Shown: positions 41,803-56,295 of the stretch, in pieces
Layout of the letters: every line of letters begins with the position of its first letter
Numbering within the stretch: position 1 is the first letter of the stretch
From: Guillardia theta CCMP2712
Taxonomy: Eukaryota; Protista; Cryptophyta
Direction: 5' to 3'
Assembly (NCBI RefSeq): GCF_000315625.1
Contig: NW_005434650.1
Span: 571,069 to 635,068, forward strand
DNA: 64,000 nt
Translations under genes and position numbers: made by a program
Notes under the pieces: generated by a model
Seen by the model: the letters and a program-made list of their open reading frames with translations, nothing else
Database searches by the model: none
What the model was told of the DNA's origin: nothing

Positions 41803-44800
41803 TTACTTCCTCTGCCAGCAGCTCCTCTTGTTCGTCATGATCTGCCATGGAAACAAGTGTAAGATGGTTACTGTCTCCCTCCCTCGCTCCCTCCACCTTG
41901 AGTACGCACGTCCCCTCGTTCACGACGTCCGTCTTCTTCATCAGCTTCCTCTGAACCGCTTGTTGTCAACACTTGCTACCCTCCTCCTCCTCATTCCCTT
42001 TTCCCTCCTCCTCCTCTTTCTCCTGCTCGCCTTCCTGCTTCAAAGATCCTCCTCCTCGTCCCTCTATTTCCTCTCCCCCGTCCTCCTCCTCCTGTTCCCC
42101 TCCTCCTGTCTCCCCTCCCCCCTTTCTCGTCCTCTTCCTTCCTGTCCTCTCTCGTCACCTGCTCCTGGTCTATCCTGCACTCCGCCCGGATGAAATCTCC
42201 GGATATCATCTGAGAGGAGGAGCTCAACTTCACCATTCCCTCCTCCCTCCTCCTCACCTGCCATGGCGGCCGTTTCATCGTCTCATACACGTCCTGTACC
42301 GAGCTCCCTGCCATGGAGGGATCAGCCCGGTCGGTCGGTCGCTCCTCCTTCCCCTCACCCGGCTTCATCACGATTACGTCGCGCAGAATGTGATCTGAGC
42401 CTGCTGCACAAGTCGAGAACCAGCTTCCTGCGACCCCGAGACTTTCTTGCCGCTGCAACGAGCTTGAGGATGGGCGAGGAGAAGGAGCAAGGAGGATCGA
42501 GGAGGAGAAAGTGAAGGAGAAAAAGAAGGAGTGAGGAGAAGTAGTGAGGAGGAGGAGGAGGAGCGCGGAAGAGCGAGGAGAGAGGAGGGGGAGAAGAGAG
42601 GAGGAGCGAGGAGCGAGGAGCGAGGAGCGAGGAGGAGGTGGAGGTGGAGGCACCTGTACGGGTCCCTCACACCGACAGGTCTCCAGGTCAGCCACAGGGA
42701 ACACGAGGAGGGGAGGGCGAAGGTGAACGGCAGCGTTGACGAGCTCAAGCACTCCCGTAGACCCTCCCAGATTCGCCATAACGTCCTGCACCCACCGCAG
42801 CTCCTCCCCGAAGGTGGATAAAGGACTGATGACGTGGACATGGCGGGAGCCAGGACTGTAGTCGACCCTCCCCTCCCGTCGCCACCGAGAAAGTCTGAGC
42901 TCGGCGAGAGCGCTGACTCGAGCATGCGGCTCCTTGTCGTACCTTCGCAGCAGCTCCTGCACGTGCCCCTCCGAGTCCGGGTGGTCGCACTTGTTGAGGG
43001 CGAGGAGGATGGGGAACCTGACCCGGAGGAAGTGAGCGACGAGCCGGTGAAGGTCGATGGGCATCCAAAGGCGGAGCTTAAGGGGAAGTATCAGCAGAGC
43101 CAAGGAAGAAGAAGGAAAAAAAAAAAGAGACGAAGACAAAAGGAGAAGGGCAGAGACGTCCGAGGAGAGGAGAGAGGAGAGAGGAGATGAGGAATGTAGA
43201 GGTAACGAAAAGATTTTGGGAGCATAGAAGAACGAAAAGAGGAGAAAACAAGGGGCTGGTGGAGAGGTGGCAAGAAAAAGATTTCAAGAATCATGAAACT
43301 CACTTCCTCCGACGATATTGTCTTCAGATCAACTCCCATCCTCTTCAGAGCTGCTGCGGCTACCGCGCGAGACGCATGGTAACCGCTGAGCAGCTCGACC
43401 AGTCGATCGACGCCGAGCCGGACGACGGAGGCCCACTTTGCTTGTATGTTGTTGTAGATCCAGCGATGGATCTCGTTTCGTACCCATGCCACGTCATCAC
43501 TCGGTCTGTAGACATCCTGCTCCTCCTTTGCCTTCTCCTCTCTTCTCCCGAGCCCGGAGAAAGAAGCTTCCGTCGGGTTGCCGCCTTTGTCAGTCCCTCC
43601 CGACGCGTCCACCACATGGATCAGCACGTCTGCTCCACACAGGTCGTTGAGGAACGCGTTCCCGTGCCCTCTGCCCTGGTATGCCCCAGGCACAAGACCA
43701 GCCACATCGATCACCTGGATCGGCAATAGCCGCTCGCCGTTTCCAGCGAAGCCATGGGCAGGCGTCATCGTGCCCTCTACATCCTTGGCAGGGGAGGGGC
43801 AGGGGACAGTGAAGTAGCCCTGACCTGTGTTGGGAAGGATCGTCGTGAAGGGGAAAGACTCCATCCTCGCATCGTCCTCGGGCCTGACTGGGTTGACAAG
43901 GGCGTTGAAGAGTGTTGACTTGCCCGCTGACGGCTTGCCGACCAGACCTACCACGAAGTTCCACTGCCCTCCCTTCCCCTCAACCTGATTATGATGCTCA
44001 TCGCTCAACCTGTGGAGATGATCGTACTTGGCTGCGTCCTCGCTCGCCTCCTCCACAAGACCCTCGTCGTCCCCGGCGTCCTCCTGGCCACTAATCAGCA
44101 GTCCAGCCAGCCCTTCGAGGTTGCTGGAGTCAGTTGCAGCTTGTTCAGCTCGCTCTCCGCTGTCAGGTGCTGCAGACACCTCAGGAGGATGGTTGAACAT
44201 CCATTCCTTGACGACGTTGATGACGTCAAAGATCATCGGGTTCCCCTTGCTGCCCTCGCACTCCCCCCGAATGCGGTCGAACATGGCTGGGTCCACCTGC
44301 TTCAACCCCTTCACCTCTACCTTGGGAATAGCCTCGTCTGGATAGTCCTTGGGGAGGAGGATCTTGACACTGACAAGAGCATCCACCTCGGACAGGCGGA
44401 CATGAACCATCGGGGGCTCTAGGCAGGACTCCAAGACGTCATCGCCGAAAATGGCGGCTACCGCTTCAAGCTCATCCTGTTGGCATGCTGAGGCTGCGAA
44501 GCAAGGAGCGTCGCTCTCCTCCTCGGGCTGCATCTGTCTGCGCAAGAAAGCCTCATACACGTCAAGATCCGCGGCCTTGCAAGGGAAGATGTGACTGTGG
44601 TTGTGACAATGGCTCTCCGCTCCCTTGAACAAGGACGACAGTCGTTGGCTCTCCTCCACCGTGACAGCCTCGTCCTCCGTACCCATTATGTGAAGCGACG
44701 GCACCTTCAGCTCTCCTGCAAGACCTGCCTCCTCCACCGCGCTCGTGGCGTATCCTCCAGAAACCATGATGAACCGCAAACTTCTCAACGGATGGCCCAT

Positions 44801-45169
44801 CGGCAGTCCAGCAGCCTTTGCTGCAATCTCTGCCGCCAGAGCAGCTCCCTGGGAAAACCCAACGATGCCGTCGAACCTCGTCCCTTGGAAGGCATCCTCC
44901 ACCTCCCTATGAGCTGCTCCCCCCCCTCCCCTCTCCTTCCGACCCCCTCCGTTCCACCAGCATCGCATCGGGACCATCTGCCCCTCGGATAGAGGCAGCT
45001 CAACAGGCCCATCGAGGAAGTGGAAGTCGGCGAAGCTCTGACATCTGGCAGTAAGAGGAGAAAGCCTCTGAGAGAAGATCTCCCCGCACTGCTGGCTGCC
45101 ATGCAGGCAAAGCACTTGCAGCCGCCCTCCCGCCGGCATGGCCTCCCCGACACTCCTGTCGACAAACAT
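41803..45169 (-). CDS. FSH1/OVCA2 serine hydrolase - RWD - Obg-family (Ygr210/archaeal-type) GTPase - TGS fusion
   Basis: Hydrolase: LCLHGSQQ, GFSQG, GTEDEAV, HSHIFP. RWD: QQDELEAVAAIF..LPKDYPDEAIP..GNPMIFDVI. GTPase: G1 GKPSAGKS, G2 FPFTT, G3 DVAG, G4 NKCD, G5 VSAL. TGS-like end MKPGSSVQDVY..GDFIRAE..VLKIMTNKRSCWQRK*. Confidence 0.9.
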
Positions 45170-45337
45170 CTTCAATTCTCAGTGTCCGGCCCGGGCCCGG
45201 CCCGGGGCCCTGAGCCCGACCGAAACTGAGGCCACCGCAGTAACGAGGCGATCATCGGATGGCGAAATCGATCAGTTGAGAGTCATCAATCTACTTCATT
45301 CACATACCAACATATCAACTGCATACTCTGTGCTCAC

Positions 45338-46822
45338 TCACGCTGTGCTCGGGAACGACACCATGTCTGCTGGAATGTGATTGGGACATGTTTGCCGCAG
45401 TACCTCCATCGCATCCTGTAGCTCTGACGCTGACATGCACTCTCCTTCTGATATCTGATAATTCCAGCCAAATTTCCGACCACACTGATAGTCAGAGCAC
45501 GTTGCTGCAGGCTGGTACCTCGGCTTGTTGAAGATTTGTTTCATCTTCTTCCCTATGCTTGTGTCTGGAGCTCTCCCGTCGTAGAGGAAGTTGTCCAAGG
45601 TCTCCACCGAAGACCCTCCGGCGATCCCATTGTAGTCCAAGCATATGTACTCGCTCGCGTCGAGGTGTCGAAGCTGAGCGACCAGGTCCAAGGCTGCCGC
45701 CCGAAGCCTCTGAGCTTGTTCGTTCCAGGGCCTGAAGTTGCGCTTGATCGAGCAAGAGCAGATGATGCTCAGCGCGTCTCGGATCAAGACGACCACCTTG
45801 AAGTTAGCCTCCGATCGCCGCATCGCCTTGACAAGCTTGGCCACGTCCGGCGTTCTTTCGCTTGGGCCTGCGTAGTTGGGGTATGAGAGCATTCCCGTAG
45901 AGCAGCTGGAGCTATGCTCTAGTCCGCTCAGGAAGTAGAAGGAAGGAGAATGCTGCCTACGCCGAGAGCGTCTGACAATCTCAGCGATCGCAGAGCTCGC
46001 CGTCCTTGGGCTTCCATGCCACCTCACGTTGAAGAGACCGTTCTGACCCTGCTCGTTCCAGAGCAGACACGTCATATGCACGGCTTCGTGGTCAGTGCGG
46101 ACATGAGGGTGATTCTTGCCCAGCTGATCGATGAGATGATGTCCAGTGCCTTCTACTCCTGCCCAAAACACAAACACCGGCCCACCTGACTTGCCTCCGC
46201 CCACGGACGGCCTTTGAAAGCTCTTGGTGAGGAGAGGGCTCAGGCTTATCCTCCGCCGGACCACCTCGGATGCTGCAGCAGCCTTGAAGGTCCCCGTGGT
46301 GTTAGACTGCAGCGCTTGACCTGCGAGCAGAGCAGAGCTCGAGGCTCGTCTGTCTGCGGTGCTGAGGTTGTAGGACGAGGAGCTGTTCTGCATCTTGCTA
46401 GAAGCGTTTCGTGGGTCCGGGGCTGCTCCTGCTAGCCTGGAGACTCCTTTCTTCATGCTCGAGAGCAGCAAGATGTCCTCCACTGTCAGCCTGGAAATCA
46501 CTTTTTTCCATTTCATGACGTTCAGTCCATTCGATGTCAATGAGAGGTTGTGCACGTAGGTAGAGATGTTCAGCAGGGACGAGGTCGACAGAACAAGCCG
46601 AAACTCCTCTCCCACGTTTGCGCTACCCTGCCCGATCATTGTCGGATCTTGTTGCTGATCGAGCGAAGGGCTGTTTGGAAAACAAGAATGCATGCAGCTT
46701 ATCAGGAGATCTCGCAGAAGCATCCCACAGATCACTGCCAAGACAAGGCCTGCGTTCCTTGCGGTGCTGACACCTGACGCTTTCCCAGGCAGAACGACAT
46801 TCTTGCTATTCTTGCTGCGCAT
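45338..46822 (-). CDS. Type II membrane sulfotransferase-like protein, copy 2 (inverted paralogue, 494 aa)
   Basis: Near-identical to 35221-36708 with the same motifs. Confidence 0.7.
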   Translation of the reverse strand: MRSKNSKNVVLPGKASGVSTARNAGLVLAVICGMLLRDLLISCMHSCFPNSPSLDQQQDPTMIGQGSANVGEEFRLVLSTSSLLNISTYVHNLSLTSNGLNVMKWKKVISRLTVEDILLLSSMKKGVSRLAGAAPDPRNASSKMQNSSSSYNLSTADRRASSSALLAGQALQSNTTGTFKAAAASEVVRRRISLSPLLTKSFQRPSVGGGKSGGPVFVFWAGVEGTGHHLIDQLGKNHPHVRTDHEAVHMTCLLWNEQGQNGLFNVRWHGSPRTASSAIAEIVRRSRRRQHSPSFYFLSGLEHSSSCSTGMLSYPNYAGPSERTPDVAKLVKAMRRSEANFKVVVLIRDALSIICSCSIKRNFRPWNEQAQRLRAAALDLVAQLRHLDASEYICLDYNGIAGGSSVETLDNFLYDGRAPDTSIGKKMKQIFNKPRYQPAATCSDYQCGRKFGWNYQISEGECMSASELQDAMEVLRQTCPNHIPADMVSFPSTA

Positions 46823-50700: not shown

Positions 50701-53700
50701 CACTTCGGGGGAAACGCAGCGGTGTAATCAAACCTCCACCTGATCGAGAGGAGCGGCAGAGTCAGCAGATATGCATCTGAAGTCATGAAGGAGAAGTAGC
50801 AGCAGAAGGTAGAGAGGGAGGGAGAGTCAAAATTGCCCCTTGTTGTCCTGCACCTTCACCTACTCCTGCGCCTGCTCTGTCCCTTTCCTTCTCCCTCCTC
50901 CTCCTCCCTCCTCTCCTTCATAGCTCACATGTCCGAGAGTTCTCCGGCAACGACGTTGGCTCCCGAGAAGATGAACACGTAGGGGTCGGACAGCAGCATC
51001 CCAGCGCATGCTCGCGGTCGGGGAGCTGCACCTGAGACGATGACTGCCAGCCAAGTGAAGGCCACGTAGCTCTTGTCCAACGTCAACTTGAGCACCCAAA
51101 GATCGTTGAGATCCCCCCAGTCCTGGTCGTGGAAGTAGCTCGCTCCTCCGAACATGACGAGGTAGTTCCCAAAGATCTGCACTGCCGCTCCTTTCCTCGC
51201 CCTCGGGCTCCCTTGCTGGGGGTCGTCGAAGATGTTGAGCTTGTCCAAGGTGTACACGCTGCTCTCGTTGCTCGTCGTTACATCGACCTTCCACACTTCC
51301 ATGATGACTTTCTGACACCCACGGTCAGCAACTGCTGAACTCTCTCCTCCTCCTCCTCCTCCTCCTCCTCCTCCTCCTTCCTCCTTCTCCTCCTCCTCTT
51401 CCTTGTCTTCTCTTCATTCTTCCCCTCCTCCTCCTCTCCCCCTCCTCCTCCCACCCGCTGCGACAAGAAGCTGTCCTGTGATGAGCACTGGTCCTGGCTC
51501 CCTGTGCAAACAGCTCCAGCAACGATCCGGAAGCTTCCTGGAGCTGCCGGCAGCATGGAAATACTCCAGGTGAACGGGAGGCCCTCGCCTTGGGCCTCCA
51601 CCTGCTGCCAGCGGACGGTCAGGCTACCTGAGAAGCTCATCCTCCAGAGAGAGTTGGAGGGAGCGAACGAGTTCTGCTGCAGGCCCCCACAGACGTACAT
51701 CTGCACGCGAGCGTCAGAGGGAGGAAGGATGGAGGGAGTGGGAGGAGGTGGGGAAAGTAGAGGAAGGAGAGGAGAAGGGAAGGGGAGAGTTCTGCCCCCT
51801 CCTCAGACTCCAGGGGCGCAGGAAGAGATCGATTACGTTATTTCCATCGACAGCAGCAGCGTGAAAGTACAGTCCCCCGGGAGTAGAGGAGGATTCGACT
51901 CGAAGGGGCCCGATGACCATCCCCATGTTGGAGGAGGAGGAGGAGGAGGAGGAGAGCTGAACGATGTAGACATCATCGTAGGGCAGGAGCCGATCCTCGG
52001 TAAAGCCTCCATAGATCACAGCAGCGTTCGCCAGGTAGGGGCTAGAAGTCGGAGACATGCTCACGCTTGAGTGGCCGTACCGGGACAAGGGGAGGCACTG
52101 CTGCACGCTAGAGCAGGAGGGAACGGCTGCTGTCGTGTCGTTGCTGCCGACGCTGAGCACGGAATAAGTCAACATGCTCCAGGTGGAGGAGGAGACGTCA
52201 AGAGTCCACAGCATAGCATGAGCGTGCATGTCGCTCAACCCCGCAAAGATCAGCATGGTGGTTCCTCCCACCAGCGTCAGTCCTGTCCCCCAGAACTCCG
52301 AGCCCGGTTTGATCCCGGGTACCTCCATCACTCCCCACGTCTTCGCCGTATCCTGGTAGAGGTAGAGCGCGTTGGATACGCTCTCCCCCTTATGCTGCCC
52401 GTCCTCCTTCGCGGTGGACGCATGCCGGGAGTCTCCGCCGAAGATCATATTGCCCGTGCTGCTCTCGAGGAGGGAATGATAGGAGAGGGGAGGGAGACCT
52501 GAAACAGGGGACATCTCCATGATCAGATTGCCGAAGTTCGCGTCCAACTGCAGCATCTCCATCGGGAGGGAGGTCGATCGCTGAGAAGCTCCTGGGTGAA
52601 GGGCAAGGATGTCAGAGTGAGCAGGGGGAGAAGGTGAAGGAGGAAAGGAAAGTTCTATGAGTGAGGAAGGGAGGGAAGAAGAGGAGGAGCTGGAAAGGAC
52701 GAGGAGTCTGAAGAAGTTGACAAGGAGAGAAGGGTTGGAAGGGGACACACTGGAGGAGGACAGCAGGACGTCAGGAGACAATGAGAAAAGTTGGTAGAGA
52801 GGAAGTAAGAAGAGAGGAGGGAGAAGGAGCAAGAGAGCGAGGAGAGAGCGCAAGGGAGAACTCAAGAGCAAGACGTCACCGTAGGCAAGGACGGAATGCC
52901 CTCCGACCAGGATCGCCTTATGGCCGTACATGGGGAACATGGTGACTGTAGACAGGGGACGGATCAGCTGCCATGGGTTTCCAGTCGTGATGCCGAAGTC
53001 GAACATCCAGACGTCAGCAAGGATGGTCCAGGTAGAGCTGACGCCTCCGTGCACGAGCAGGCGGGTCTTGGAGATGGAGGCAGCGACGTGCGAGTGGCGA
53101 GGGGAAGGAGTGCCGTCTGCGGGAGTAACAATCTTCTGCCATGAGCCGAAGGACAGCTGCTTCTGCGACAGCCACTCGGTCTTGGAGCAGGGGACGGTGG
53201 AGGGGAGGATGCTGGGCCTTGCTATGAGCGCACCGTTCCCCTTGCTGCCATGGCGGCCGGAGGGAGAGAAGTCTCTGACCACTCCATCCACGTTGGCGCT
53301 CTCGAACTGCCACCAGCCCTGGAGCGTCTGGTCGTTGTTAAATAGTCCCCACATGCTGCTCTGAACCTGATCTGGGGTCCTTGAGACGTTCCACCACTTG
53401 ACATCGTCCATGTACCCGTTGAAGTAGGAGGAGACAGCTTCATCCCCGTATCCCAGCACCAGCGACTGCGTCGAGTCGTAGGTACCAACTTTCAGCCCTG
53501 TCAGGTTCTTGCTGACGTCGACCTGGCCGTCCACGTAGAGGACAAGCTCGTCGTAGCCCCTCCCGCTGCCGAAGGTGACGGCGATGTGGTGCCAACTAGA
53601 GTCGAACACGTTGACTCTGCCCTTGAGGTGGATGTCAAGGGCTGTGACCCGGAGGTAGCTGGTCGAGGAGAGGCGCTGGATGTTGAGGTTTGACCCCATC

Positions 53701-56295
53701 GAGAGGATCGACTGATACTCCGTGTCAAAGTCAAAGATGAACACCCAGGCCTCGATGGTAAAGCTCAGCTTGCCCCCAGCTGTGGAGATCGGGTCGTAGA
53801 TGACCACAAAGTCGTTGATCCCGTCGAACCTCGCCATGTTGTTCAACCTCTGCTTGCACGCAGCGTCGCGGGAGGAGGCGGATTGGACGGGCTTGAACGC
53901 CCAGAGGTCGTTGCTGATCAATTCCTTTGCTGCTCCTACATCCGCCACCCCACCGAAGACCAGGGCGTACGGCTCGAGGGAGAGCGGGTCCATGACAGAG
54001 CAGGAGTGCTTGCTGCGCTTGCTCGGGACCTCAGAGGAGGAGAAGCTGATGGGATTCCATTTCTGACTTCCAGGGTGAAATCTCCACATATCCTGCAGCC
54101 ACACACTGTCTGCCGCTTCTCCCCCGTGGATGATCTAGAAACGCAACGTCAAACCTGCACGGCAGAGGAGGAGAAGGAAGGAGGGAAGAAAAAGAGAAAA
54201 GGAGTAACAGCAGCAGCAGGGCCCACCATGTAGTTCCAGATCTTGAAGGAGCAAGAGTAGGCTCTCGCAAGGGGCTGCGCGTCAGTTCCGTAGCTCACTG
54301 GCGACCAGATTCCCTGCCCGAGGTCGAACCTCCAGGTATCTCCGTACATCCCGTACCGCGGGGAAACTCCTCCGAAAACGATCAGGCTCGACGCGAACGC
54401 CTCGGCCGCATGCCCGCTTCTCCTTGAAGGGAGCGTGCCGGAGGGCCTCGCTCGCCTCCACACCTGCGTGCTGACGTCATCCTTACACTCGGAGCGATGG
54501 GAAGCACCATGTCGTTGATGTCGGCGTAGTAGACCTTGTTGGAGAACTTCACTCGGTTCGTTGACCCGAACAGCACGATCAGCAGCTTCGGGCCCTGCAG
54601 AACGTCAGCCGGTCCAGCCACGGCCATCACTGAGACTTTACAGCAGCGTACTCCATGGTGTGGAAGGCAACCTTCGGAACTGCCTGACCGGACCCAAGGA
54701 GCTCCGTCCTCTTCCACTTGAACTGCTCGGTGTCGTAGTACCACATACTCGACACAACTTTCTCCGTTCCTGCTCCCCCGTTTCCTTCTCCACCGACGAC
54801 GATGATCTTTGAAACGGAAGTTACTGGCCCAGCTACATCTCCAAGACTATCCTTGACTCCAACCTACGAACTCCCACTGTTCCTCCACTCAAATCCAACC
54901 TCTCTCCCACTCCCTTGCCCTCTCCCTCTCCCTCTCCATGTAACCAAGTCCCCTCCCAACACCATTCTCCCTTCTCTCTCTCTCCCTCTCCTTCCCTCCC
55001 TCCCTCCCTCCCTCCCTCCCTCTACCTGAAAGTTGTAGAATATTGACGTGTGTGCTGCTCTGCCCGACGGCCCACTCGTCGATGGATCCCACGTTATCCA
55101 GAAGGCAGAGTCGGGGTTGACTTGCAGGGTCCAAAGGTCGTTCTGAAGGACCGTAGACTCGTCGATCCCTCCGAAGAAGAAGATCTGATAGCCTCCTGAC
55201 CATACAGACACGTCAGACATTATCGTGCTGCCTCCAGCCTGCGGTCTACCCGAGCTGGTATCGCTCTGGTACGCCGTCGACGAGTGGAACATCCGGGGGC
55301 CGGGCCCGGGGCTCCGAGACCTGGTGGGAAACGACAAGGTCACGTAGAGCTTCACCGAGCCCAACGGCTGCCAGGTCGTACTGGTCCACGTTGACTGCCG
55401 ACCACTCTCCGCTGTTGATGCTTGTCTGCGGCTGAAACCTGAGCAGAAAGTAGGTCATCCCCGAGAAGCTTGTCCGACCCGAACACTTACATCCAGATGT
55501 CACTGAGGACAGACTTGCCGTCGCTCCCCCCGAACAAGAGGATCTGCGAGCCAAGGATGTCCATGGAATGTCCATACCTCCCTGCTCTCACCGTGACTCC
55601 ACGACAGTGGTCCCCCTAGCTCATCCTCCGTCCTTACCCGTCGGGGCGACGTTGCTCAGCGACTCAACCTTGACCCACTTCGACTGCGAGCCAGAAAAGG
55701 CAAACTTGAACATGGCGGCAGAGAAGCAGTCGTTGGACAGGCTTGTCGTCGGGCAGGCGCTCCTGGTGTACGTCCGCCCTCCCCACACCAGAGCAGCCAC
55801 GGCATCCGGGTTATCTTTCTGCCACAGGACTCCCCTTGCTCCCTCCACCGGCGGAGGAGTGACGGAGTCCCCGCAAGAGGAGCACTGCTGCAGCGGGATG
55901 AACTCGAAGGAGAGTACGTTGAATGTCCATGCATCGTTGAGCAGGCAGTGGTCCTTTACCACACAAAAGCCTCCCTGACAGACGCTTGCTGCCGTGCTTG
56001 GGTCGCAGGGCAGGCCAGCGGTCTCAATGGGTCCTCCTTCGCATATTGAGCACCCGTCCGTCGCTCCTCCGAAGATGAAGATCTCGTTGGTGCTCTCGAT
56101 CTGAACGCTCACATGCGATCGACGGGGAGGAGGTTGAGGGCCCGACGGGATCATCTCAGTCCACGATGAATCGCAGGGACGGCAAACAAGAAGGGCAAGA
56201 AGGAGGGAGAGATAAAGATTCTGCGCCAGAGCAAGGACTCTCTTGATGCTGTTCTCTTGGCCAGGAGAGTTCGACATGCTAACATCCCTTGACAT
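47708..56295 (-). CDS. Type I membrane protein: signal peptide, Kelch repeats, LamG, Kelch repeats, filamin-type Ig repeats, TM, helical cytoplasmic tail
   Basis: Kelch PPPRRSH..IFGG..NDAW repeats. LamG FDGINDFV..FTIEAWV..WHHIAVT..LYVDG..YFNGYMDDVKWWN. Filamin GDGLSSCTAG..FTIIARDSSGN..DGTYDVSY..ISGSPY. TM IIFAPIACFAFGLIMAVVM followed by KKKR. One intron holds the 49017-49116 gap. Confidence 0.85.
48961..49150. repeat. (GGGA)n intronic microsatellite spanning a 100-N gap
   Basis: gagggagggagg on both sides of N 49017-49116. Similar tracts at 31140-31210, 41587-41660 (GAGAG), 51343-51400 (TCC) and 57020-57107. Confidence 0.9.

What the first reader, a model, noticed from the sequence alone, without database searches (positions are those of the whole stretch)
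41803..45169. FSH1 serine hydrolase - RWD - Ygr210-type Obg GTPase - TGS fusion
Seen: hydrolase, RWD and G1-G3 lie in one uninterrupted ORF, so the fusion is not a splicing artefact. The Ser-Asp-His triad (GFSQG at 44846-44860) and G1-G5 are intact. Known: RWD proteins (Gir2/RWDD1, Gcn2, IMPACT) dock on Gcn1, and Gir2 partners the Obg-family GTPase Rbg2/DRG2 on stalled ribosomes. Ygr210-type GTPases and FSH1/OVCA2 hydrolases lack clear functions. Inference: a Rosetta-stone protein that delivers an esterase to stalled or collided ribosomes (for example a peptidyl- or acyl-ester substrate), a possibly undescribed translation quality-control module.
Basis: partly seen in the sequence, partly recalled or inferred. 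Interest (0 to 1): 0.75.

Follow-up and report, generated by a model that had tools for sequence, protein, structure and literature searches.

The report
Esterase–RWD–Obg GTPase fusion gene
A cryptophyte-alga gene really does join an active-looking esterase, a GCN1-type docking (RWD) domain and a ribosome-type GTPase in one protein; the same unstudied fusion occurs across most eukaryotic supergroups, and a link to stalled ribosomes is plausible but untested.

Summary
A 7-exon minus-strand gene (ATG 45169, TAA 41803, 858 codons) encodes an FSH1/OVCA2-type serine hydrolase, an RWD domain, an acidic disordered linker, a Ygr210-type Obg GTPase and a divergent TGS-like tail. Hydrolase, RWD and G1-G3 lie in one 622-codon exon.

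- **Conservation:** Ser106/Asp166/His193 and the G1, G2 and G3 residues are invariant in 42 fused homologues (G2 lies in a gap in one).
- **Distribution:** 86 of the 120 listed homologues carry FSH1+RWD+GTPase. They include choanoflagellates, ichthyosporeans, chytrids, dinoflagellates, stramenopiles, haptophytes, green algae, Rhizaria and kinetoplastids. Invertebrate animals keep RWD+GTPase without the esterase, so RWD-GTPase is the core.
- **RWD type:** the family profile is closest to RWDD1 (the partner of the Obg GTPase DRG2), then GCN2, RNF25 and IMPACT, all reported GCN1 binders.
- **GTPase type:** a homologue's GTPase-to-tail model matches the archaeal Ygr210-type structure 1WXQ end to end (Z 29).
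- **Esterase type:** its fold neighbours are acyl-protein thioesterases.

No functional study was found. One 2025 paper notes the same architecture in a Chlamydomonas gene lost in a viable deletion strain. The best reading is a single-chain analogue of RWDD1-DRG2 with an esterase add-on; GCN1 or ribosome binding is inferred only. A word search of earlier scan notes found no similar finding on other DNA.

The parts
41803..45169 (-). Whole coding region: 7 exons, 858 codons plus stop
   Evidence: All introns are GT..AG. Each exon's translation aligns to conserved family positions.
43304..45169 (-). Exon 1 (622 codons): hydrolase, RWD, linker and GTPase G1-G3 in one ORF
   Evidence: AF2 model has mean pLDDT 79.
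44537..45121 (-). FSH1/OVCA2-type alpha/beta serine hydrolase (aa 17-211). Ser106 lies in GFSQG (44846-44860), Asp166 at 44672-44674, His193 at 44591-44593.
   Evidence: Pfam FSH1 E 1.4e-31. Triad invariant in 42/42 homologues. pLDDT mostly above 90. Best fold match is yeast FSH1 1YCD, E 2.4e-12, TM 0.69-0.73.
44189..44503 (-). RWD domain (aa 223-327). Invariant E233, Y276 and P277; D244 is at the GCN2 D37-equivalent position.
   Evidence: Pfam RWD E 8e-10. Family profile against PDB: RWDD1 2.7e-22, GCN2 9.4e-18, RNF25 7.4e-15. Predicted alpha-4beta-2alpha topology at pLDDT 81-96. Acidic position counted.
43976..44188 (-). Acidic linker (aa 328-398). Residues 332-363 are predicted disordered; a helix follows at 365-388.
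   Evidence: Composition (E 11 and D 8 of 72 residues). pLDDT below 50 for 332-363.
43304..43975 (-). Obg/Ygr210-type G domain, first part (aa 399-622). G1 at 43916-43939, G3 DVAG at 43697-43708, followed by the GxGxGNxFL switch II motif.
   Evidence: MMR_HSR1 E 6.7e-15. PDB 1WXQ E 2.2e-26. NF007171 profile positions 4-195.
42654..43076 (-). Exon 2 (141 codons): helical insert and the G4 (NKCD, 42984-42995) / G5 part of the GTPase
   Evidence: YGR210-like_G4 E 8.7e-18. NF007171 profile positions 202-330. The CEGPV motif is shared with P0001 and P0002.
41803..42452 (-). Exons 3-7 (42452-42359, 42307-42258, 42209-42159, 41950-41897, 41841-41803): divergent TGS-like beta-grasp tail, ending in the TNKR..WQ motif and TAA
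   Evidence: Alignment to the family tail. hhalign against the archaeal Ygr210 TGS region gives probability 88%. Homologue model against 1WXQ covers chain residues 1-395 at Z 29.4. Pfam TGS not detected.

Best explanation
Shown: this is a real, intact nuclear gene of a cryptophyte alga. It belongs to an old, widespread and functionally unstudied eukaryotic family. The family is built as an (optional) FSH1/OVCA2-type Ser-Asp-His esterase or thioesterase, an RWD domain, an acidic flexible linker, a Ygr210-type Obg GTPase with a helical insert, and a TGS-like tail. The catalytic residues of both enzymes are strictly conserved, so both are probably active. There is no N-terminal targeting sequence, so the protein is probably cytosolic.

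Inferred: it works as a single-chain counterpart of the RWDD1(Gir2)-DRG2(Rbg2) pair. [quoted passage not shown] The Obg-type G domain and TGS tail engage the ribosome near the A site and GTPase centre. The tethered esterase, present in most lineages but lost in animals, removes an acyl or ester group from a component of that complex. The substrate is unknown. The fold points to an acyl-protein or long-chain acyl (thio)ester more than to peptidyl-tRNA.
For: - **Gene and domains:**
- **Conserved catalytic residues:** triad and G motifs invariant in 42 homologues (A4 invariants).
- **Fusion is widespread:** 86 of the 120 listed hits carry FSH1+RWD+GTPase, several from complete transcripts.
- **Core module:** RWD+GTPase persists without FSH1 in molluscs, annelid, nemertean, amphioxus and ascidian.
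- **RWD type:** nearest to RWDD1, then GCN2, RNF25 and IMPACT, all reported GCN1 binders. An acidic residue sits at the GCN2 D37 / RNF25 E30 position in the window and in 29 of 37 members.
- **GTPase type:** the GTPase-to-tail model of a homologue matches 1WXQ (Z 29.4), then ribosome-bound YchF (8KIE, Z 17.8) and Rbg1 (4A9A, Z 13.6).
- **Linker:** acidic and disordered. Gir2/DFRP2 is itself described as intrinsically disordered.
- **Yeast data:** high-throughput maps place stand-alone YGR210C with eIF2/eIF2B or with the small-subunit processome.
Against: - There is no experimental or co-complex evidence for any family member binding GCN1 or ribosomes.
- No DFRP domain is present, and the GTPase is Ygr210-type, not DRG-type, so the parallel is an analogy.
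- Only one of the three GCN2 interface acids is well conserved. The E125 position is acidic in 8 of 37 members and the E136 position in 21 of 37; the window has Asn at the latter.
- Some RWD domains bind other partners, for example RWDD3 with Ubc9.
- AF2 gives no fixed arrangement of the domains (pTM 0.43).
- A Chlamydomonas strain that has lost the orthologous architecture is viable, with no phenotype attributed to the loss.
- Orthology to yeast Ygr210 was not resolved.
Confidence: 0.4

Rival explanations
1. A GTP-regulated protein or lipid deacylase unrelated to ribosomes. The esterase is the business end, acting as a depalmitoylase or long-chain esterase like APT1/2 or OVCA2. The RWD is a general E2-like adaptor for another partner, and the GTPase acts as a switch or chaperone.
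For: Fold neighbours after FSH1 are APT1/APT2, SOBER1, LYPLAL1 and carboxylesterases. OVCA2 and FSH1 prefer esters longer than 10 carbons in vitro. RWDD3 binds Ubc9 rather than GCN1. The triad is invariant wherever the domain is present.
Against: Animals retain RWD-GTPase without the esterase, so the esterase cannot be the core function. The RWD profile ranks RWDD1, GCN2 and RNF25 above RWDD3. The characterised Obg-family members are ribosome-associated.
Confidence: 0.22
2. A ribosome- or translation-linked GTPase that does not work through GCN1 or stalled ribosomes. It might act in 40S biogenesis or in initiation (eIF2/eIF2B), with the RWD binding another partner.
For: Yeast YGR210C clusters with small-subunit processome proteins or with eIF2/eIF2B. 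Structural kinship to YchF/OLA1 and other ribosome-binding Obg GTPases.
Against: Those data are high-throughput, mutually inconsistent, and concern a stand-alone protein whose orthology to this family was not established. They do not explain why an RWDD1-like RWD is conserved from kinetoplastids to amphioxus.
Confidence: 0.2
3. One reading: the esterase hydrolyses the peptidyl-tRNA or aminoacyl-tRNA ester on stalled ribosomes, as a new rescue or quality-control release activity.
For: The GCN1/A-site analogy above. The TGS domains of DRG-type GTPases lie near the A-site tRNA. One chytrid gene model adds an N-terminal 2H/CPDase phosphoesterase, a family that acts on a cyclic-phosphate by-product of tRNA splicing.
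Against: No known peptidyl-tRNA hydrolase has this fold, and the fold neighbours are lipid or protein deacylases. The esterase was lost in animals. The chytrid 2H junction rests on a predicted intron of about 29 nt.
Confidence: 0.1
4. An artefact: a merged gene model, a pseudogene or an assembly chimera.
For: Exons 3-7 are short, introns 2 and 5 are low-complexity, and no transcript of this organism was examined.
Against: The three key domains share one 622-codon ORF. There are no frameshifts or stops, all splice sites are canonical, and exon ends match family motifs. Complete transcripts of other protists carry the same architecture.
Confidence: 0.02

Closest known systems
RWDD1(DFRP2/Gir2)-DRG2(Rbg2) complex on GCN1-bound stalled ribosomes
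   Same: It combines an RWD domain (the family profile's best PDB hit is RWDD1), an acidic disordered segment, an Obg-family GTPase and a C-terminal TGS-type domain.
   Different: It is one polypeptide rather than a heterodimer. There is no DFRP domain. The GTPase is Ygr210-type with a helical insert, not DRG-type with HTH and S5D2L. An extra N-terminal esterase is present. GCN1 or ribosome binding has not been shown.
Ygr210-type Obg GTPases (P. horikoshii PH0525, PDB 1WXQ; NCBIfam NF007171; yeast YGR210C)
   Same: The G1-G5 motifs, the YGR210-like_G4 insert and the overall G-insert-TGS fold. A homologue's model aligns to 1WXQ at Z 29.4, rmsd 3.5 A, over 333 of 344 residues.
   Different: Scores are far below the family cut-offs: YGR210-like_G4 gives about 55-65 bits against 101 for the archaeal-type protein, and NF007171 gives 167-196 bits against a cut-off of 387. 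The TGS is too divergent for Pfam. N-terminal RWD and FSH1 extensions are absent from archaeal and yeast proteins.
FSH1/OVCA2 serine hydrolases (yeast FSH1 1YCD; human OVCA2)
   Same: Pfam FSH1 match, GxSxG elbow and a Ser-Asp-His triad whose spacing (S to D 60 residues, D to H 27) resembles OVCA2 Ser117/Asp179/His206. Best fold match is 1YCD.
   Different: Stand-alone FSH1/OVCA2 proteins are at most 36% identical. Here the domain is the N-terminal module of an 858-residue protein.
Other GCN1-docking RWD effectors (GCN2 kinase, RNF25 and RNF14 E3 ligases, IMPACT)
   Same: The same logic of an RWD fused to an effector enzyme or regulator. The acidic residue at the GCN2 D37 / RNF25 E30 position is conserved.
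   Different: The effectors here would be a GTPase and an esterase, not a kinase or ubiquitin ligase. No binding data exist.

Membership tests
FSH1 serine hydrolase family (Pfam PF03959) | Profile match above the curated cut-off | tested here: met
   110.2 bits against a cut-off of 21, E 1.4e-31
FSH1 serine hydrolase family (Pfam PF03959) | GxSxG nucleophile elbow and a Ser-Asp-His triad | tested here: met
   GFSQG with S106, D166 and H193; invariant in 42/42 homologues. Spacing resembles the OVCA2 triad.
FSH1 serine hydrolase family (Pfam PF03959) | Alpha/beta-hydrolase fold closest to yeast FSH1 | tested here: met
   AF2 pLDDT above 90. Foldseek top hit 1YCD, E 2.4e-12.
FSH1 serine hydrolase family (Pfam PF03959) | Esterase activity | not testable with these tools
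   Needs an enzyme assay
RWD domain (Pfam PF05773), GCN1-binding subgroup | Profile match above the cut-off and the alpha+beta RWD topology | tested here: met
   39.3 bits against 22.8. Predicted helix, four strands, two helices.
RWD domain (Pfam PF05773), GCN1-binding subgroup | Conserved YPxxxP loop | tested here: inconclusive
   Y276 and P277 are invariant. The window reads YPDEAIP, one residue longer than the canonical spacing; most relatives have the canonical spacing.
RWD domain (Pfam PF05773), GCN1-binding subgroup | Closest kinship to RWDs that bind GCN1 | tested here: met
   Family profile against PDB: RWDD1 2.7e-22, GCN2 9.4e-18, RNF25 7.4e-15, RWDD3 1.1e-12, IMPACT 1.5e-8
RWD domain (Pfam PF05773), GCN1-binding subgroup | Acidic residues at the predicted GCN1 interface (GCN2 D37, E125, E136) | tested here: inconclusive
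   D37 position: window Asp, acidic in 29/37. E125 position: window Asp, acidic in only 8/37. E136 position: window Asn, acidic in 21/37. The interface itself comes from an AF3 model in a preprint.
RWD domain (Pfam PF05773), GCN1-binding subgroup | Physical binding to the GCN1 RWD-binding domain | not testable with these tools
   No multimer prediction or binding assay was available
Ygr210 subfamily of Obg GTPases | G1-G5 motifs with the Obg-type switch II (GxGxGNxFL) | tested here: met
Ygr210 subfamily of Obg GTPases | YGR210-like G4-containing insert domain | tested here: met
   PF08438, 65.2 bits against a cut-off of 24.7
Ygr210 subfamily of Obg GTPases | Closest solved relative is a Ygr210-type protein, not YchF or DRG | tested here: met
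   1WXQ E 2.2e-26 against YchF 1.6e-13. Fold Z 29.4 against 18.4 for OLA1 and 13.6 for Rbg1 (on homologue P0001).
Ygr210 subfamily of Obg GTPases | Whole-protein score reaching the NCBIfam NF007171 cut-off | tested here: not met
   166.7 bits (exon 1) and 57.3 bits (exon 2) against 387; homologue P0001 scores 195.8. This is a divergent eukaryotic branch, so it is filed as Ygr210-type rather than as a member of the archaeal model.
TGS domain (Pfam PF02824) | Profile match | tested here: not met
   No TGS hit at E up to 1 in fused homologues P0001, P0002, P0009 and P0073, nor in window exons 3 and 6 (exons 4, 5 and 7 are too short to scan). The archaeal-type P0120 is hit at 1.6e-13.
TGS domain (Pfam PF02824) | Homology and fold equivalence to the TGS of Ygr210 proteins | tested here: met
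   hhalign probability 88%, E 3.2e-6. The model aligns to 1WXQ through residue 395 of 397. This was tested on the family and on a homologue, not on the joined window protein.
DFRP-DRG system (Gir2-Rbg2 / RWDD1-DRG2) | DFRP domain that binds the GTPase | tested here: not met
   No DFRP family hit in exon 1 at E up to 0.01
DFRP-DRG system (Gir2-Rbg2 / RWDD1-DRG2) | DRG-type GTPase (HTH, S5D2L insert) | tested here: not met
   The GTPase is Ygr210-type
DFRP-DRG system (Gir2-Rbg2 / RWDD1-DRG2) | Association with GCN1-bound stalled ribosomes | not testable with these tools
   Needs experiment

The most novel reading that the evidence does not exclude
The family is an ancestral eukaryotic arm of the GCN1 stalled-ribosome response: an RWD-docked, GTP-gated esterase that cleaves an ester or thioester on the stalled translation complex (peptidyl- or aminoacyl-tRNA, or an acylated factor). 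This would give the orphan FSH1/OVCA2 hydrolases and Ygr210 GTPases their first physiological function. It would also explain their fusion as a Rosetta stone.
Probability: 0.12. Interest if true: 0.85.

Novelty: new variant of a known kind. Interest (0 to 1): 0.58.

Why it matters
FSH1/OVCA2 hydrolases and Ygr210-type GTPases are conserved proteins without a physiological role. This fusion appears in most eukaryotic supergroups seen here. It ties both proteins covalently to an RWD domain of the type that recruits GCN2, RNF25, IMPACT and RWDD1-DRG2 to GCN1 on stalled ribosomes. That yields a concrete hypothesis, testable in tractable organisms such as Chlamydomonas, trypanosomatids, diatoms and Salpingoeca. 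It also suggests that 'RWD plus Obg GTPase plus TGS' is a recurring functional unit, found both as a heterodimer and as a single chain. If the hypothesis is wrong, this remains an ordinary member of a catalogued but unstudied family.

Tried and rejected
- **TGS by sequence:** Pfam TGS was not detected in the tail of four fused homologues or in the two window tail exons long enough to scan. A family tail profile against PDB sequences gave nothing significant. Support came only from hhalign and from fold.
- **Literature:** searches for Ygr210+RWD, FSH1+RWD domain+GTPase, and Cre12.g538200 gave only a bystander mention in PMC12711092.
- **Chytriomyces 2H/CPDase fusion as an RNA link:** the junction depends on a predicted intron of about 29 nt, so it is kept only as a lead.
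- **Gene neighbourhood:** flanking ORFs have no Pfam match or are unrelated.
- **Stand-alone relatives of the FSH1 domain:** only 8 hits, all at most 36% identical except two probable fragments of the same family: the Hanusia phi piece and P0069 (48%, 372 aa). The closest stand-alone subtype was not resolved.
- **Orthology with yeast Ygr210:** no Dikarya sequence reached the top-120 list and no other route to that sequence was available.
- **Earlier scan notes:** a word search found no similar finding on other DNA.
- **Joined protein:** the joined, spliced 858-residue protein was not searched or folded. The exons were handled separately by reference, and a natural homologue (P0001) served as proxy for the GTPase-to-tail fold.
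- **Big representative search:** it was not used because relatives were plentiful.
Full report
**1. What is in the sequence**

The region is GC-moderate eukaryotic DNA. On the minus strand there is a 694-codon open frame, 43091-45175. An in-frame TGA lies four codons above the ATG at 45169, so 45169 is the first possible start.

This single ORF matches three Pfam families:
- FSH1, E 1.4e-31
- RWD, E 8e-10
- MMR_HSR1, E 6.7e-15

The ORF leaves the coding frame at a GTGAGT donor (43303). The gene continues through six GT..AG introns of 48-227 nt. The exons are:

| Exon | Coordinates |
|---|---|
| 1 | 45169-43304 |
| 2 | 43076-42654 |
| 3 | 42452-42359 |
| 4 | 42307-42258 |
| 5 | 42209-42159 |
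| 6 | 41950-41897 |
| 7 | 41841-41803 |

The total is 2577 nt, or 858 codons plus TAA.

Three results support the model:
- Exon 2 carries YGR210-like_G4 (E 8.7e-18).
- NCBIfam NF007171 covers profile positions 4-195 in exon 1 and 202-330 in exon 2, so that junction is seamless.
- Exons 2-7 each align to conserved family blocks, including CEGPV at the end of exon 2 and the terminal TN(R/K)K..WQ motif in exon 7.

No transcript of this organism was examined. Each exon was used by reference, and a natural homologue served as proxy for the C-terminal half.

**2. Integrity of the catalytic sites**

I aligned 42 full-length fused homologues with the window's exons added as fragments.
- Ser106 (GFSQG, 44846-44860), Asp166 and His193 are invariant.
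- The G1 lysine and the G3 aspartate are invariant. The G2 threonine is present in 41 of 42, with one gap.
- G4 (NKCD) and G5 (SA) lie in exon 2.
- Triad spacing is S to D 60 residues and D to H 27. This resembles human OVCA2 Ser117/Asp179/His206.

The AF2 model of exon 1 has these features:

| Residues | Element | pLDDT |
|---|---|---|
| 17-211 | hydrolase | mostly above 90 |
| 228-326 | RWD, with the expected helix, four strands, two helices | 81-96 |
| 332-363 | acidic segment, disordered | below 50 |
| 365-388 | helix | about 60-80 |
| from about 400 | G domain | — |

The pTM of 0.43 means no fixed mutual arrangement of the domains is predicted.

**3. The TGS claim**

Pfam TGS does not detect the tail in four fused homologues. 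It also does not detect it in window exons 3 and 6, the two tail exons long enough to scan. A profile of the family tail finds nothing in PDB sequences.

Two results do support it:
- hhalign of that profile against the TGS region of an archaeal-type Ygr210 protein (P0120) gives probability 88% and E 3e-6.
- An AF2 model of the GTPase-to-end part of the closest full-length homologue has pLDDT 84 and pTM 0.87. That homologue is P0001, 44% identical to exon 1. The model superposes on P. horikoshii 1WXQ from residue 1 to 395 of 397, with Z 29.4 and rmsd 3.5 A over 333 residues.

So the tail is a divergent TGS-type domain of the Ygr210 kind. This is shown for the family and inferred for the window protein from its alignment.

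**4. The fusion is old and widespread**

With exon 1 as query, 307 proteins scored E <= 0.001. Of the 120 listed, 86 carry FSH1+RWD+MMR_HSR1 by precomputed Pfam (my count). The taxa include:
- Salpingoeca (choanoflagellate) and Ichthyophonus (ichthyosporean)
- several chytrids
- Symbiodiniaceae and Polarella (dinoflagellates)
- diatoms, Tribonema and Hondaea (stramenopiles)
- Prymnesium (haptophyte)
- Tetraselmis and a pedinophyte (green algae)
- Diplonema (Pfam does not detect an RWD in that hit) and the trypanosomatid Porcisia

Several of these come from complete transcript assemblies. Plasmodiophora (Rhizaria) also has the fusion.

Using a chytrid GTPase half as query revealed a second form. 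It is about 557 residues and has RWD+GTPase without the esterase. It occurs in bivalves, gastropods, Capitella, Lineus, Branchiostoma and an ascidian, and in Pelomyxa and Chrysoparadoxa. NCBI names these 'YGR210C-like' or 'C428.15-like'.

On the accepted species tree, the simplest reading is an ancestral three-part fusion with loss of the esterase in animals. RWD-GTPase would then be the indispensable core. Vertebrates, Dikarya, land plants, apicomplexans and ciliates were not among the listed hits. The lists are truncated, however, so absence is not established.

The best hit is only 44% identical. No near-identical annotated protein was returned. A Hanusia phi fragment is 74% identical over 16% of the query. 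Together with earlier scan notes, this places the window in a cryptophyte, probably Guillardia theta.

**5. What kind of RWD, GTPase and esterase**

- **RWD.** The family profile (A2) against PDB gives RWDD1 2.7e-22, GCN2 9.4e-18 and 3.1e-16, RNF25 7.4e-15, RWDD3 1.1e-12 and IMPACT 1.5e-8. RWDD1(Gir2), GCN2, RNF25 and IMPACT are the reported GCN1 binders. A 2026 preprint predicts that GCN2 D37 and RNF25 E30 contact GCN1 R2312. The window has Asp244 there, and 29 of 37 family members are acidic at that position. The other two GCN2 interface acids are poorly or only partly conserved.
- **GTPase.** By sequence it is closest to 1WXQ (E 2.2e-26), then YchF/OLA1. By fold it follows 1WXQ, then OLA1, ribosome-bound YchF and Rbg1.
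- **Esterase.** By fold it is closest to yeast FSH1, then acyl-protein thioesterases APT1/APT2, SOBER1, LYPLAL1 and carboxylesterases. OVCA2 and FSH1 prefer long-chain alkyl esters in vitro.

**6. Mechanism**

The combination of RWD, acidic disordered linker, Obg-family GTPase and TGS reproduces in one chain the composition of RWDD1(Gir2)-DRG2(Rbg2). According to the papers read, that pair sits in the A-site factor region of the leading stalled ribosome. Its RWD touches the GCN1 C-terminus.

I therefore rate as most likely (0.4) that this protein is recruited by its RWD to GCN1 on slowed or collided ribosomes. Its GTPase and TGS would engage the ribosome, and the esterase would act as a tethered accessory. 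Which steps are shown and which are inferred:
- **Shown:** the architecture, the conservation of the catalytic residues, the RWD subtype and the GTPase subtype.
- **Inferred:** everything about GCN1, ribosomes and substrate.

The peptidyl-tRNA idea is the weakest link (0.1), for two reasons. The fold group is made of deacylases of lipids and proteins, and animals dispense with the domain.

Three rivals remain:
- a ribosome-unrelated, GTP-gated deacylase (0.22)
- a translation or 40S-biogenesis role independent of GCN1 (0.2); high-throughput yeast data place YGR210C with the small-subunit processome or with eIF2/eIF2B
- an artefact (0.02)

**7. What is known already**

The only paper in the library that names the architecture is PMC12711092. 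It reports that the Chlamydomonas lf5-2 deletion also removes Cre12.g538200, which JGI annotates with exactly these four domains. [quoted passage not shown] That strain is viable. Reviews of DRG and GCN1 list Ygr210 only as an Obg subfamily and do not mention an RWD-bearing form.

The family is therefore catalogued but uncharacterised. This locus is one more member. The single-chain analogy to RWDD1-DRG2 is, as far as I could search, not in print.

**8. Verdict**

I class it as a new variant of a known kind, an RWD-docked Obg GTPase module with an esterase. Interest is 0.58.

Noticed in passing
L001:3001-6359 (Chytriomyces hyalinus, GCA_027604105.1): Two C. hyalinus gene models (P0073, P0081) add an N-terminal CPDase/2H phosphoesterase domain in front of FSH1-RWD-GTPase. 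The junction rests on a predicted intron of about 29 nt, and the following exon has no ATG of its own. If real, it hints at an RNA-end or tRNA link.
   Followed up: partly
P0132, P0137, P0139, P0149, P0161, P0176 and others: Invertebrate animals (bivalves, gastropods, annelid, nemertean, amphioxus, ascidian) have an RWD-Ygr210-type GTPase of about 557 aa without the esterase. No vertebrate was among the listed hits.
   Followed up: partly
literature: PMC2233647, PMC1940025, PMC4839750: High-throughput yeast maps put stand-alone YGR210C either with eIF2/eIF2B or with the small-subunit processome. PMC5793785 reports a strong AUG uORF on YGR210C.
   Followed up: no
window 41803-45169: No near-identical annotated protein for this locus was returned by two searches, although earlier notes place the genome in Guillardia theta. 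The public annotation may miss or mis-model this gene. Only a Hanusia phi fragment (P0233, 74% identical) was found.
   Followed up: partly
window 42453-42653 and 41951-42158: Introns 2 and 5 are CT/GA-rich low-complexity DNA. They create long spurious ORFs on both strands, for example 41973-42398 (+) and 42374-42925 (-).
   Followed up: no
window 45338-46822 (-): A 494-codon ORF with no Pfam match ends only about 170 nt upstream of this gene's ATG, on the same strand. The intergenic spacing is very tight.
   Followed up: partly
window 51714-54104 (-): A 796-codon ORF with Laminin_G_3 and Kelch beta-propeller matches. It may relate to the propeller proteins noted earlier in this window.
   Followed up: no
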